DNA of 63,040 bases, the filler included, from Ministeria vibrans ATCC 50519 (lineage: Eukaryota > Protista > Filasterea): the NCBI GenBank assembly GCA_943704425.1. It is 10 parts of 10 records of this genome, joined end to end, with 100 filler letters (N's around TTAATTAATTAA, not from the genome) between each part and the next. Parts side by side here need not be neighbours in the genome. Positions count along the whole stretch, not along the records: positions 55,855 to 59,744 come from CALSCP010002162.1; 9 more parts are not named here. One strand, 5' to 3'. Both the position numbers and the translations under genes were made by a program. Below the pieces are notes generated by a model. The model was given only the letters and a program-made list of their open reading frames with translations. It made no database searches and was not told where the DNA came from. Shown in pieces: positions 55,381 to 59,844 of this stretch (position 1 is the first letter of the stretch; the number at the start of each line of letters is the position of its first letter).

Positions 55381-55885
55381 GTGAAACATTAAAAAAAAAC
55401 CCGGAAAAAACTCAGTGAGGAGCGCTGTGTGCGACGCCAAACCTGTGGCCCCAAGCTCTGCGAATCCATACGCTAGCACACCCACCCTGTGCCGATTGCA
55501 TTTGGCGCTGGCGTGTTTTCTGCACATGTCAAGTCAGAGTGAAAATGTCTTCTGACGCTGCTCCCTCGCCCCCTCGACGCGCCCTTGCCCCAGTCCAAGT
55601 TGCCCTAGCCCACACACCCTGCCACCAACACATTCGCCGCACCCTTCGTGCCGTACTCTTCCTTGTTGTGTTCGTTACTATGTCCTGTGACATGCTGATC
55701 CGCACACACATGCAGGATCTGCGTGAGACCACGCACGACATGCACTACGAGAATNNNNNNNNNNNNNNNNNNNNNNNNNNNNNNNNNNNNNNNNNNNNTT
55801 AATTAATTAANNNNNNNNNNNNNNNNNNNNNNNNNNNNNNNNNNNNNNNNNNNNCTTACGACCCCCCCCCCCCCCCACCTCTTAC

Positions 55886-58800
55886 TTGTCCCCCGAGTGG
55901 CTTGTCGCAGCCGGCACACTTGGGCACAAAGAGACGGTCGTGGTCTGCGACGCAGTACGGTCGGTCCTTGACAATGAAGAACTCGCCGTCCAACGGCACA
56001 TAACAAGTCTCACACACAAAATGGTCAAGATGCCACTCGCGGTCCATGGCCTGCAATGCATCCTCGCTCTTCTTGATGGGCCTGCTACATCCTCCGCACA
56101 GGCGCTCGTCGCGCTCGCTCGCCAGCTCAAGGTCGCCCACCGACGCAGGCATGCGCCACTCAGGCTCACGCCGTCGCGGCGCAGCAGCAGCGGCAGCAGC
56201 AGCAGCAGCAGCTGACGCCCCAGCACCACTACCACTCGCTCCTGTGCTCTTCTTCTTGCCCACTGCACGTGCAATCGCAACGCCATTCTTAGGCGCGCCT
56301 CCCTCATCCTCACTGTCCGAACTCTCAATCTTGGCATACTCATCGTCCCCATCAATGTCAGCCCCACCTGTGCCTCCTCCTGTCCCAGACCCGTCCTCAT
56401 CGTCGTCCGAATGTCGAAGATCCGCATACTCATCCATCTACACAATAGATTTGATAAAATTAGTACTCTCCTCTCAGCATCTCCTTCCTACGTCTGTGTC
56501 CAAATCAAGAGATGCCAATCGAGTGTTGACTCCCACCGACTTGCCATCTTCCTTGTTCAAAATATCACTACGATCATACAAACACTACATAAGCAAAAAA
56601 AAGAAGACTGTTCCGGCTGGACAATAGAAAATTTACCTGAAGCGGGGAGTGTTCTGATTGGGCTGCTTCTGGACGCCCGGGAGAATACCGTATGACTTGC
56701 GTTGGGGCCCCTTGTATGAGTTGCTGCCGGCGTCGATGGCAGCGCGGCGCTTGAGAGCCTCAAGGCGCGTGTCAAGAAGACCGCGCACCCAGCGCTCCTT
56801 CTCGGGTTGACTGCTTGTGTAGAGACGCAGACAGCGGTTGCGGTCGACCAGCTCAAAGTAGCAGTTGTGTTGCATGTCGGGCGTGTTGGTCTCAACACAG
56901 CACTCGCACACGTCAATGCGCGCCGCGGGCTCCCCAGTGCCTGCCTGCGTGCCCTTCCAGTAGCACAGATGTCCCGTATTCTTCAGCACAAAGTACCGCT
57001 GCTTCTTCATCGCCTTGCCTGGCTTTTGGTTCACCTTGTGCGACGTCTTCCACATGATCCCTTCCAACACCACATCCGACGTTGTCCCCGGCACAATCGT
57101 TGCCGAGATGGCACCACTGCTTGCATTGGCCACCGTCGCCTGTTGCCCCGCCTGTTACACACACACAAAAAAGTGAAAGTAAAAGAAAAGAGAAGCGAAA
57201 AGAGAAAAAAAAAGTGATAGAGGGTGTAAGAGAGAGAGAGAGAAAGAAAGAAGAAAAAATAAAACAAATCAAGGAGACGTGTCAGTCGCGATCAGTAAAG
57301 AGGAAAAATAAATAAAATTATTATTATTATTATTATTAATCATAAAAATTTACGTACTGCAACTGCAAAGGGATGGGCATCCTTGCCACACTTGACGGGC
57401 TGACCGCTGAGTTCGCGCTCAATGACCCACTTGAGGAGGGCGGGTGCCTGCTGCTCGTGCCGGAAGAGCAGCACCAGGGCGCCAATGAGGTCGTCAACCT
57501 TAGAGGCGGGTGTGGCGGCGAAGATGAGGACCATGGCCCAAAAGTCACCGTCAGCATTGGCTGCCGAGTTGCCCTGGACCGTGATGGTCGCAATGAGTGG
57601 ATCGGGCTGTCCGTCGTCGAGCTCCGCCAGCGCATCTTTAAGCTTTTGTGCCTGCAGGCGCAGATGAGAATCGCTCAAGCCAAAGAGGATGGCATCGTCG
57701 ACGGCATCGCCGAGCGTCTGCCACGGCTCCCCCGCCAGGTTCATAATCTCCGGCAGTGGATTTGACACAATGACGGCGGGTGCGTCCGGAACCGTCTCGA
57801 GACACATTGCCTCGACGTACGCCGCGAGCGCTGTAGCGTTTTTCGTGACAAAGCTGTTGTACGGCAGCATGTAGGGCTCTTTGGTGGCAAAGACAAGGCC
57901 GTTGGCAAGCTGTTGCAGAATTTTGCTGCACAACAACAGCGCACGACGACCCTCCGACGGGAGCTTCGAGCCAGGGGGCAGCAGCCCCGATTCGAGGGGC
58001 ATGACAATGGCCGGACAAAGAAAGCGCAAAAACAGAAAGGAGCCCGTCATTCGCGCCGCCAACACATTCCCATGATGCTGCTGAATGCCTGCACGAACCG
58101 CTCGACAAATATCGCGCAGCTCCTTTGGTGCTCCCACCACGCCTTGTGTAATTTGCTCAAACAGCTTCTCGCAAAGTTCCCTACAATGCGCACACACCAA
58201 AAAGTTGTTTCAGACACAATTCAAAAAGACACGCACAATAAATATATCACAGCAGTTCAAAGACACACACAACATCTCTCACATTGTGTCTCTCAGACAC
58301 AGTTCAAAGAAACACGCACGATATCTCAGCAGTTCAAAAACACACACACAGTATCTCTCACATTGTGTCTCTCAGCAACAGTTCAAAGAAACACGCACGA
58401 TATCTCTCAGCAGTTCAAAGACACACACACAATATCTCTCACACTGTGTCTCTTAGACACAGTTCAAAGAAATACACAATATTTCACACTGTGTCTCTTA
58501 GACACAGTTCAAAGAGACACATAATATCTCTCACACTGTGTCTCTTAGACAGGTCAGAGAGACAACACAATGACTCTCACACAGACACACAGACACCCAC
58601 TACAGTAGCCCCCCCCCCCCCATACACACTAAACGTATCATTAGGTCTGACACAATTCCATACACACACACACACACACACACCTAGGATCACTACTTTG
58701 CCACCACTCCATCCCACACTGCTCTCCTTCACCCCAACACACAAGAAAGTTCTCAACACACACTCACCACCTCAAAAAAAAAACCTCACCTCAGCAACTC

Positions 58801-59025
58801 CTGGTTCTTTTCGAGCGTGTCGGCCGGGCCCAGACGGCTGGGATCGACTTCATACGAGAGGCCGCGGGCGACAGCATTGGCAATGGTGTCTCCAAGGATG
58901 CTGACGAGGTAGTCGCTGGCGGCCGCGCGAGCGCAGGCGGTGAGTAACTTGGTTGCGACCGTGTTGGACCGGAACAGCGTCCCGCGAAGATTCGATTCCC
59001 TCGCCGACTCGTCTGCCTCCGCCAT
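55886..59025 (-). CDS. RasGAP-PH-LIM protein (5 exons seen; 3' end truncated inside a second LIM domain)
   Basis: Arginine finger GTLFRSNTVATK, YEVDPSRL, FLFLRFLCPAI, SKILQQLAN..KEPYM. PH domain LEGIMWK..KKQRYFVL..LCYWK..EKERWVRGL. LIM domain CGGC..WHLDHFVCETC..YCVADH, then CAGC. Confidence 0.88.
58205..58550. repeat. Intronic minisatellite (CAGTTCAAAGA(A/C)ACAC..ATCTCTCACA(T/C)TGTGTCTC units)
   Basis: About eight related units are visible in the RasGAP intron. Confidence 0.8.
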
Positions 59026-59844
59026 CTGTCCACACCCCCCATACGCAGAGTCACTTTTTTGTTGAGTTGCGCTGCTTTTTTTCTTTTTCATTTTTTTCAA
59101 AAAAAAATTTGTTGATATCACAAACGACCACAACCAAATACTCACAGGGTCGCCAAAGGGGACCGGCCAGAGGCCATTGAGACGAGGCGGGGCGGGCAGA
59201 GTGCCATTCACAAGCAAACAAAGAGAAACACACAATCAGTGGTTTCTGCTCTTACCGTCGATTGTCAAACAAAGGGATTGGCTGAACGAGAGACGGAGAG
59301 AAGGAGACGGAGGGGGGAGGCGACGCAGAGAGGTCGATGGATGGATGTATGTATGCGGGTGCGTGGGCGTGCCTGCACGCGTGTGTGTCAGAGCGAGAGG
59401 GAATCAAACTGATCGCTTATTCGCTTTAGAGATCTGACTTTTTCTTTCAATCAGCACTTCCGAGCGAGTTCAGCGTGAGCACTGAGCAGGAGTGGGGCGG
59501 CCTAGGCGTCAGGCGACAGTGCGGCGACAGAGGGTGTTTTGTCGTGGCGATCAGCAGTTTGTGCTTAACTGTGCACTCACTGTGCACTGCCCTTACTCAC
59601 AGGTGAGAATCCGCATTTGACCATAGTTATAGTTAATTTTAACTAATTCTCTATTCTATTACTCACTCCTTCTTCTCAGTCCGATCTTGCGCGACAACTG
59701 CCTCCCCCGGAATCCCCTCAGGTTGGCGCCCTGAGACCCCCCCCNNNNNNNNNNNNNNNNNNNNNNNNNNNNNNNNNNNNNNNNNNNNTTAATTAATTAA
59801 NNNNNNNNNNNNNNNNNNNNNNNNNNNNNNNNNNNNNNNNNNNN

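What the first reader, a model, noticed from the sequence alone, without database searches (positions are those of the whole stretch)
57358..59025. Apparently circularly permuted RasGAP domain
Seen in sequence: the likely start (ATG at 59025, directly after an AG acceptor) is only about 18 codons before the arginine finger (TLFRSN). The nearest upstream exon, ending at ACG|GTAAG near 59256, has an in-frame TGA and so looks like 5' UTR. The helices that normally precede the finger are therefore missing. After the normal GAP C-terminus the protein reads DPLIATITVQGN..GDFWAMVLIFAATPASKVDDLIGALVLLFRHEQQAPALLKWVIERELSG (about 57603-57403). From memory, this aligns closely with the neurofibromin segment just before its finger (ERLVELVTMMGDQGELPIAMALANVVPCSQWDELARVLVTLFDSRHLLYQLLWNMFSKEVE-x6-TLFRGNS). 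Established knowledge: the N- and C-terminal segments of RasGAP domains pack together in the extra subdomain, so permutation is structurally feasible. Inference: the chain is opened beside the catalytic finger loop, and the PH domain attaches at the new C-terminus near the active site.
Basis: partly seen in the sequence, partly recalled or inferred. Interest (0 to 1): 0.85.

Follow-up and report, generated by a model that had tools for sequence, protein, structure and literature searches.

The report
Circularly permuted RasGAP domain gene
A protist gene encodes a Ras-inactivating (RasGAP) domain whose first helices have moved to its end, a rearrangement shared by a small family that includes Capsaspora and Pigoraptor and that I did not find described in the literature searched.

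Summary
Spliced contigs from three studies join a 5' leader exon (59395-59256; no ATG; in-frame TGA four codons before the start) directly to the ATG at 59025. No further upstream exon is seen. The protein therefore starts 18 residues before the arginine finger (R19).

After the normal GAP core and C-terminal helices, exon B carries a tail (57612-57358). Its core (57525-57409) matches a profile of 48 canonical pre-finger segments: 25.4 bits, E 5.5e-10. hhalign gives 98.1% probability, E 1.2e-13.

In about 27 ordinary RasGAPs this tail aligns immediately upstream of the finger. In Capsaspora CAOG_02521, a Pigoraptor protein and two metagenomic proteins it lies downstream of the core, as here, with no pre-finger helices upstream. 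One of these (P0035) also starts about 21 residues before its finger.

An AlphaFold model of one homologue matches NF1 from finger to C-terminus (Z 25) and leaves four tail helices over. The tail's three-dimensional position could not be tested: no coordinates were available, exons were not joined, and the window's own partial model was poor in the tail.

This is a new variant of a known fold. GAP activity and any regulatory role of the following PH domain are inferred.

The parts
59256..59395 (-). 5' untranslated leader exon (5' limit approximate). It has no ATG and carries an in-frame TGA four codons before the start codon once spliced.
   Evidence: Contigs X5 record 15 (59256-59395) and X1 record 5 (59256-59381) end here without loose ends. 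Codon check.
59026..59255 (-). Leader intron (230 nt, GT..AG).
   Evidence: Joint 59256/59025 in X1 and X5. A low-depth unspliced contig (X1 record 4) also exists.
58790..59025 (-). Coding exon A: start codon, 18-residue N-terminus, arginine finger loop (TLFRSN) and the following central-domain helices.
   Evidence: Pfam RasGAP positions 12-69, 26.1 bits. NF1-GRD chain positions 74-140, E 1.9e-8. Splice joints.
58969..58971 (-). Codon 19, CGG: the catalytic arginine finger.
   Evidence: Read from the sequence. Aligned to the NF1 TLFRGN motif.
58181..58789 (-). Intron of 609 nt containing tandem repeats (periods about 45 and 81) and a GT microsatellite.
   Evidence: Joint in X1, X5 and X6. Tandem Repeats Finder.
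57775..58180 (-). Exon B, first part (residues 1-135): second half of the GAP central domain, with the FLFLRF (FLR) motif and the conserved R/K/Q/N/K/E positions.
   Evidence: Pfam RasGAP positions 114-207, 54.6 bits. NF1 E 3e-16. Model matches NF1 1341-1464 with Z 17.4, rmsd 1.1. Invariant columns.
57613..57774 (-). Exon B residues 136-189: takes the place of the canonical C-terminal (extra-domain) helices and forms the new connection to the tail.
   Evidence: In homologue P0047 the equivalent region aligns to NF1 up to residue 1528. In the window's own partial model this region has low confidence.
57358..57612 (-). Exon B residues 190-274: the transposed pre-finger helices (the tail) followed by a short linker.
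   Evidence: Family alignments. In about 27 canonical RasGAPs the tail aligns just upstream of the finger.
57409..57525 (-). Core of the tail (exon B residues 219-257): homologous to the two helices that immediately precede the finger loop in canonical RasGAP domains.
   Evidence: HMM of 48 canonical pre-finger segments: 25.4 bits, E 5.5e-10. Only hit in the six-frame scan. hhalign probability 98.1%, E 1.2e-13.
57152..57357 (-). Intron (206 nt, GT..AG), pyrimidine-rich and of low complexity.
   Evidence: Contig pieces 57357/57150 in X1, X5 and X6. Sequence.
56637..57151 (-). Exon C: Ala/Gly/Ser-rich linker, then a PH domain.
   Evidence: Pfam PH, 47 bits, residues 27-125. Joints.
56492..56567 (-). 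76-nt mini-exon flanked by introns of 69 and 54 nt.
   Evidence: Joints 56637/56567 and 56492/56437 in X1, X5 and X6.
55885..56437 (-). Exon D: acidic stretch, poly-Ala, first LIM domain. The transcript continues beyond the piece.
   Evidence: Pfam LIM, 53.5 bits. Loose end of at least 255 letters at 55884 in X1, X5 and X6. The exact 3' end is uncertain by 2 nt.

Best explanation
The gene encodes a multidomain signalling protein whose RasGAP catalytic domain is circularly permuted.

The chain starts 18 residues before the arginine finger. It then runs through the whole central domain and the C-terminal extra-domain helices. Only after these does it supply the helices that precede the finger in every canonical RasGAP. 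A linker, a PH domain, an acidic/poly-Ala stretch and LIM domain(s) follow.

In canonical RasGAP domains the N- and C-terminal segments pack together in the extra domain (established structural knowledge). Joining them and opening the chain at the connection between the last pre-finger helix and the finger loop can therefore keep the fold.

Shown here: the transcript structure and start codon; the swapped order of homologous segments; its conservation in at least four other proteins; intact catalytic motifs.

Inferred: the tail folds back into the canonical position; the protein is an active GAP for a Ras-family GTPase; the PH and LIM domains target it to membranes or adhesion and cytoskeletal sites; the arrangement arose from a tandem RasGAP by loss of the outer parts.
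For: Transcript:
- Spliced contigs from three studies define all exons and a non-coding leader.
- The leader has no ATG and an in-frame stop before the start codon.

Order swap:
- Exon A matches NF1-GRD chain positions 74-140, and exon B residues 2-121 match positions 145-260.
- The tail aligns directly upstream of the finger in about 27 canonical RasGAPs, for example P0103 at 1236-1279 followed by the finger region at 1284-1348.
- The canonical pre-finger HMM scores 25.4 bits, E 5.5e-10, on exon B residues 219-257. hhalign gives 98.1%, E 1.2e-13.
- That HMM hit only upstream of the core in 126 canonical proteins. It hit downstream only in tandem GAPs and in the permuted set.

Conservation of the arrangement:
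- Capsaspora P0004/P0151, where finger, core, tail and PH lie in one continuous exon.
- Pigoraptor P0016.
- P0047, a continuous ORF with the order PH, linker, finger.
- P0035, which starts 21 residues before its finger, has a stop 24 codons upstream and shows no pre-finger hit within about 700 nt upstream.

Phylogeny: the window and Capsaspora pair with SH-aLRT 95. The four closest permuted proteins form one clade with weak support (63). Adding P0035 is not rejected (p-AU 0.23).

Structure: the P0047 model (pLDDT 77.7, pTM 0.76) aligns over residues 12-313 to NF1 1266-1528 with Z 25. Four further helices (321-383, pLDDT 66-80) are left over, about the size of the missing N-terminal segment.

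Catalytic positions: the invariant or near-invariant positions (finger R; FLR; R79, K86, Q89, N93, K100, E101 of exon B) are all present.

Strain differences: the three differences between the RNA runs and the DNA are synonymous, one of them in the tail.
Against: - The three-dimensional equivalence of the tail and the canonical N-terminal helices was not tested. No model coordinates and no permutation-aware aligner were available.
- The window's own exon B folded alone gave an unreliable tail (pLDDT 28-53, spurious strands).
- Against PDB sequences the tail is weak. The single sequence finds nothing. A four-sequence profile reaches NF1 chain positions 21-68 at only E 0.6-0.8, level with an unrelated hit.
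- Contigs cannot prove the true 5' end of an RNA, so a rare isoform from a distant promoter is not excluded.
- No biochemical evidence of activity exists.
Confidence: 0.8

Rival explanations
1. N-terminally truncated GAP domain plus a vestige. The tail is the leftover beginning of a lost second GAP domain from a tandem ancestor. It does not fold back onto the first domain. The GAP domain is then incomplete and may be inactive or serve only as a binding module.
For: Many of the closest sequence relatives are tandem RasGAPs whose second copy is degenerate, for example P0025, P0003, P0005 and P0008. The window's tail was not confidently modelled.
Against: The tail is conserved in sequence pattern and position across five very divergent proteins, and the canonical upstream helices are absent in all of them. 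The catalytic motifs are fully intact. In the P0047 model the tail is helical with pLDDT 66-80 inside a model of pTM 0.76. A vestige would not be expected to keep the hydrophobic pattern of the canonical helices.
Confidence: 0.12
2. Incomplete gene model. An unseen upstream coding exon, beyond the contig edge at 59744 or in an alternative isoform, supplies normal N-terminal helices, so the domain is not permuted.
For: The piece ends 350 bases upstream of the mapped leader. Contigs cannot define RNA 5' ends. Capsaspora, Pigoraptor and P0047 have N-terminal extensions with PH domains.
Against: Two independent runs end the leader at 59381 and 59395 with no loose end. The spliced leader has an in-frame stop and no ATG. 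The N-terminal extensions of the homologues contain PH domains and low-complexity linkers, not pre-finger helices. P0035 shows the same short N-terminus in an intron-poor genome. No pre-finger match occurs in any frame of 59026-59744.
Confidence: 0.04
3. Chance resemblance. The tail is an unrelated helical linker that merely looks like the NF1 pre-finger segment.
For: Matches to individual PDB sequences are not significant.
Against: Profile and profile-profile scores are strongly significant. The register is consistent: the tail ends where the finger region begins in about 27 canonical proteins.
Confidence: 0.02

Closest known systems
Canonical RasGAP catalytic domains (neurofibromin GRD, p120GAP GAP-334, SynGAP)
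   Same: Same fold core and motifs: arginine finger TLFRxN, FLR motif, and the conserved Arg, Lys, Gln and Asn residues of the helix after the FLR motif. Exon B core matches NF1 1341-1464 with Z 17.4, rmsd 1.1, 36% identity. Homologue model matches NF1 1266-1528 with Z 25.
   Different: The helices that precede the finger (NF1 about 1198-1265) are absent from the N-terminus and encoded after the C-terminal helices. The chain termini lie at the finger loop instead of in the extra domain.
Capsaspora owczarzaki CAOG_02521 / CAOG_009560 (hypothetical protein) and Pigoraptor chileana EP01137_P018881
   Same: Same permuted order, followed by a PH domain. Capsaspora also has C-terminal LIM domains and pairs with the window in the tree.
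   Different: About 34% identity in exon B. Both carry long N-terminal extensions with PH domains ahead of the finger, whereas the window protein starts at the finger loop. Neither source name mentions a permutation.
Tandem RasGAP proteins (P0003, P0005, P0008, P0010; Thecamonas 'disintegrin' P0002; Diphylleia P0015; P0025)
   Same: Among the best sequence matches. They contain the junction 'C-terminal helices, then pre-finger helices' that the permuted form keeps.
   Different: They keep the first pre-finger segment and a second, often degenerate, core. They are duplications, not permutations. A direct ancestor-descendant link is not shown.
GAP1-family RasGAPs (RASA2/RASA3-type: RasGAP followed by PH-BTK)
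   Same: A PH domain directly follows the GAP domain. They are the nearest language-model look-alikes of P0035 (a lead only).
   Different: Canonical helix order, N-terminal C2 domains, a BTK motif and no LIM domains (domain content from general knowledge).
Circularly permuted GTPases (YlqF/YqeH class)
   Same: A precedent for natural circular permutation in the GTPase-switch machinery (PMC2848588, listed).
   Different: There the GTPase itself is permuted, which is an unrelated fold. Here the GAP is permuted.
Plexin cytoplasmic GAP domain
   Same: RasGAP-fold variant with altered chain connectivity (Z 14-15 to the homologue model).
   Different: Plexin is interrupted by an inserted Rho-GTPase-binding domain (general knowledge) but keeps the canonical order.

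Membership tests
RasGAP domain (Pfam PF00616) | Profile match above the curated threshold | tested here: met
   Exon B scores 54.6 bits against a cut-off of 28.3. Exon A alone scores 26.1 bits, just below, as expected for a fragment covering profile positions 12-69.
RasGAP domain (Pfam PF00616) | Catalytic arginine finger (FRxN) and FLR motif, plus the conserved Arg, Lys, Gln and Asn residues of the helix after the FLR motif | tested here: met
   TLFRSN at codons 16-21 of exon A. FLFLRF at exon B residues 47-52. R79, K86, Q89, N93, K100 and E101 fall in invariant or near-invariant columns.
RasGAP domain (Pfam PF00616) | RasGAP three-dimensional fold | tested here: met
   Exon B core model matches NF1 with Z 17.4, rmsd 1.1 over 122-124 residues. 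Permuted homologue P0047 matches NF1 with Z 25 over 236 residues. The full window protein was not modelled because exons were not joined.
RasGAP domain (Pfam PF00616) | Canonical order: extra-domain and pre-finger helices N-terminal to the finger | tested here: not met
   Only 18 residues precede the finger. The pre-finger profile hits exon B residues 219-257, downstream of the core. This is the permutation itself.
RasGAP domain (Pfam PF00616) | Stimulates GTP hydrolysis on a Ras-family GTPase | not testable with these tools
   Needs a biochemical assay.
Natural circular permutant of a domain | Both segments homologous to the parent domain, in rotated order, within one polypeptide | tested here: met
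   Finger to C-terminus aligns colinearly with NF1. The tail is homologous to the pre-finger segment. Both lie in one transcript, and core and tail lie in one exon.
Natural circular permutant of a domain | Relocated segment occupies the same place in the three-dimensional structure | not testable with these tools
   No coordinates or permutation-aware aligner were available. Indirect evidence only: the tail helices of the P0047 model have pLDDT 66-80, and residues 239-367 resemble helical bundles at Z 5-7. The window's own tail model is unreliable.
Natural circular permutant of a domain | Not an assembly or annotation artefact; recurs in independent genomes | tested here: met
   The DNA run X19 covers the locus and RNA contigs from three studies agree. 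The same order is seen in Capsaspora within a single exon, in a Pigoraptor transcriptome, and in P0047 and P0035 as continuous ORFs, the latter in three assemblies.
GAP1-type RasGAP (C2-C2-RasGAP-PH-BTK) | N-terminal C2 domains and a BTK motif after the PH domain | tested here: not met
   Pfam finds only RasGAP, PH and LIM in the window's exons.

The most novel reading that the evidence does not exclude
The permuted RasGAP-PH unit is an old, conserved module found in Filasterea and other protists. Cutting the chain at the finger loop frees the catalytic arginine loop at one end and ties its neighbouring helix to a PH domain. Lipid binding by the PH domain, or by the N-terminal PH domain in the longer homologues, would then directly gate finger placement. 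This would be a built-in switch that canonical RasGAPs lack. The family would also be a documented case of permutation by tandem duplication and trimming, with living tandem relatives.
Probability: 0.2. Interest if true: 0.75.

Novelty: new variant of a known kind. Interest (0 to 1): 0.62.

Why it matters
RasGAP domains are among the most studied signalling domains (NF1, p120GAP, SynGAP). As far as I know, and in the library searched, all described ones share one chain order.

A natural, conserved permutant with new termini next to the arginine-finger loop has several uses:
- It shows that the fold tolerates this break.
- It offers a natural template for engineered split or switchable GAPs.
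- It points to a different way of coupling membrane-binding domains to catalysis.
- It gives a concrete example for how permutations arise, because tandem RasGAPs are among its nearest relatives.

It also flags that standard domain profiles, which start near the finger, cannot detect this rearrangement. More cases may therefore be hidden in annotated proteomes; the Capsaspora protein is annotated only as hypothetical.

Tried and rejected
- All searches used single exons by reference.
No result.
- AlphaFold of exon B alone: core excellent, tail unreliable (pLDDT 28-53). Inconclusive for the window's tail.
- Tail against PDB sequences: the single sequence finds nothing. A four-sequence profile reaches NF1 chain positions 21-68 at E 0.6-0.8, tied with an unrelated HOIL-1L hit. 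The register is right but the match is not significant.
- The search for homologous proteins with exon B found only the window's own fragment P0001. With the Capsaspora region it found only canonical fungal BUD2-type GAPs. The word index is too insensitive for this family.
- The 117-row core tree was unresolved. A 63-row tree gave only weak support for one permuted clade.
- P0025 was first taken for a permuted member. It is a tandem GAP with a dead second copy.
- The organism of the window was not identified. The only clues are an ENA metagenome contig and the pairing with Capsaspora.
Full report
**Gene structure**

The piece 55855-59744 carries one minus-strand gene. I laid contigs of four public runs on it.

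Three runs, from three studies with three organism labels (X1, X5, X6), have zero depth in the introns. They show clean joints with GT..AG ends on the gene's strand. A fourth run (X19) covers exons and introns alike and is DNA.

The exons are:
- a leader, at least 59395-59256
- exon A, 59025-58790
- exon B, 58180-57358
- exon C, 57151-56637
- a 76-nt mini-exon, 56567-56492
- exon D, 56437 to about 55885

After exon D the transcripts continue onto sequence that is not on this piece.

The leader is joined directly to 59025 in X1 and X5. It has no ATG, and an in-frame TGA lies four codons before the ATG at 59025. No joint or loose end leads further upstream, and the two contigs stop at 59381 and 59395. 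A low-depth unspliced contig across the leader intron also exists. It adds no in-frame ATG.

The three differences between the RNA runs and the DNA are all synonymous third-position changes. One of them lies in the tail.

**What the exons encode**

Every search used single exons by reference.

| Exon | Result |
|---|---|
| A (79 codons, counting the split codon) | Pfam RasGAP positions 12-69; NF1-GRD chain positions 74-140 (E 1.9e-8); TLFRSN at codons 16-21 |
| B, residues 1-93 | Pfam RasGAP positions 114-207, 54.6 bits |
| B, residues 2-121 | NF1-GRD chain positions 145-260, E 3e-16 |
| C | PH domain |
| D | acidic stretch, poly-Ala, LIM domain |

The invariant and near-invariant RasGAP columns are all present. 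An AlphaFold model of exon B alone reproduces NF1 1341-1464 with Z 17.4 and rmsd 1.1.

**The missing N-terminus and the tail**

Canonical domains have about 70 residues of helices before the finger. Here there are only 18 residues, and they match nothing.

I took 150 representative relatives from an exhaustive HMMER search with exon B. I then ran the exon B tail (residues 136-274) against them.

In about 27 canonical RasGAPs the tail (about 215-259) aligns immediately upstream of the place where exon A aligns. The end of the tail abuts the start of the finger region. Examples: P0103 1236-1279 then 1284-1348; P0003 1381-1424 then 1424-1490.

Further tests gave the same answer:
- I built a profile from 48 canonical segments defined only by position, 95 to 4 residues before the finger arginine. 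It hits exon B 219-257 with 25.4 bits, E 5.5e-10.
- In a six-frame scan of the whole piece this is the only hit (E 3.5e-8). Nothing upstream of the ATG matches.
- A profile-profile comparison of the tails of four permuted proteins against the canonical pre-finger alignment gives 98.1% probability and E 1.2e-13 over 50 columns, ending just before the finger.
- Applied to 212 fetched proteins, the profile hits only upstream of the core in 126 canonical ones. It hits downstream only in tandem GAPs and in the permuted set.

Matches of the tail to individual PDB sequences are weak:
- phmmer of whole exon B reports a sub-threshold second stretch to NF1-GRD chain positions 24-51.
- The tail alone finds nothing.
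- A four-sequence tail profile reaches NF1 chain positions 21-68 at only E 0.6-0.8.

The register is right in each case. Significance comes from the profiles, not from NF1 alone.

**A family, not a one-off**

The same order (finger, core, C-terminal helices, pre-finger helices, PH) occurs in four other proteins:
- **Capsaspora owczarzaki CAOG_02521 / CAOG_009560** (P0151/P0004). Architecture: PH, permuted GAP, PH, four LIM domains. Residues 22-1109 lie in one continuous exon, so this is not a gene-model artefact.
- **A Pigoraptor chileana transcriptome protein** (P0016), with six PH domains.
- **P0047**, a continuous ORF on a Logan contig. Architecture: PH, low-complexity linker, finger and so on, then tail, PH, PH.
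- **P0035**, a continuous ORF on a 29.7-kb eukaryotic contig seen in three bioreactor metagenome assemblies. It begins 21 residues before its finger, much as the window protein does. It has a stop 24 codons upstream and no pre-finger match within about 700 nt upstream.

None of these has a pre-finger match upstream of the finger.

On a core-only tree (133 columns) the window pairs with Capsaspora (SH-aLRT 95). The four closest permuted proteins form one clade with weak support (63). Adding P0035 is not rejected (p-AU 0.23). One origin is therefore compatible with the data but not demonstrated.

**Structure**

I folded residues 240-640 of P0047 with a 44-row alignment. The model has pLDDT 77.7 and pTM 0.76.
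- Foldseek and VIA-align place residues 12-313 on NF1 1266-1528 (Z 25, 236 residues) and on p120GAP 780-1042. That span runs from just before the finger to the end of the canonical domain.
- Four further helices (321-383, pLDDT 66-80) stay unaligned, as a sequential aligner must leave them. Their size fits the roughly 65 residues missing at the N-terminus.
- Residues 239-367 resemble helical bundles (Z 5-7, weak). This is consistent with an extra domain rebuilt from a contiguous chain.

I could not obtain coordinates, so the key superposition was not done. The window's exon B folded alone gave an unreliable tail (pLDDT 28-53).

**Origin**

Many of the best sequence matches to exon B are tandem RasGAP proteins whose second copy is often degenerate. 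They are P0003, P0005, P0006, P0007, P0008, P0010, P0011, Diphylleia P0015, P0019, P0025, P0100 and Thecamonas P0002.

A tandem contains the junction 'C-terminal helices, then pre-finger helices'. Trimming the outer parts would give the permuted order. This is the classical duplication-and-deletion route. It is an inference here, because the trees cannot show descent.

**Mechanism**

I think the protein is an active GAP. The finger, FLR and binding-groove residues are intact.

The tail most likely restores the helices that buttress the central domain and the finger loop. The PH domain follows the tail after about 40 residues in the window and 20-40 in the homologues. It probably brings the enzyme to phosphoinositide membranes. 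The LIM domains probably dock it to adhesion or cytoskeletal partners.

The new termini flank the finger loop. The last helix before the break leads into the PH linker, and in the longer homologues the other side is tied to an N-terminal PH domain. Coupling of lipid binding to finger placement is therefore possible but untested.

**Novelty**

Four full-text searches found no description of a permuted RasGAP domain. The only related item was the permuted GTPase literature. The Capsaspora protein is annotated as hypothetical.

I rate this a new variant of a known kind.

Noticed in passing
window 58210-58582 and 58652-58690 (intron between exons A and B): The 609-nt intron is filled with tandem repeats (periods about 45 and 81, 3-4 copies, 83-90% matches) and a GT/CA microsatellite followed by a G run. 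DNA contigs of run X19 break here.
   Followed up: partly
window 56492-56567: A 76-nt mini-exon flanked by very short introns (69 and 54 nt). It is seen in all three RNA-type runs.
   Followed up: yes
window 56181-56212: A GCA/GCT triplet repeat encoding a run of about 11 alanines between the acidic stretch and the LIM domain. Contigs of all runs break here.
   Followed up: no
window 58873, 57409, 56978: RNA-type runs differ from the DNA run at three sites. All are synonymous third-position changes (Ala51 of exon A, Leu257 of exon B in the tail, Asn58 of exon C). These are probably strain differences, not editing.
   Followed up: yes
window 58997-59285: A low-depth contig (X1 record 4, depth 8.5 against about 525) runs unspliced across the leader intron. 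This is either pre-mRNA or a trace of DNA in the library.
   Followed up: no
window 55855-55878 and 59737-59744: Both ends of the piece are G or C homopolymer runs, which look like assembly or sequencing end artefacts rather than genome sequence.
   Followed up: no
P0005, P0008, P0007, P0194, P0195, P0210, P0002 (related proteins, not in the window): Several close relatives combine extracellular-type domains (bacterial Ig, cadherin-like, IPT/TIG, PSI; the Thecamonas protein is named 'disintegrin') with tandem RasGAP domains. These are receptor-like RasGAPs in protists, reminiscent of plexins.
   Followed up: no
L003 4001-5614 (P0035): A minimal permuted RasGAP of 537 residues on an intron-poor eukaryotic contig from bioreactor metagenomes, next to a 3495-residue BEACH protein. 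Pfam does not assign its last roughly 90 residues, which look PH-like by eye.
   Followed up: partly
P0041 (728 aa, sister of Diphylleia P0015): It has a canonical pre-finger segment upstream and a second pre-finger-like segment (526-580) downstream of its core, with no detectable second core. This may be a half-trimmed tandem.
   Followed up: no
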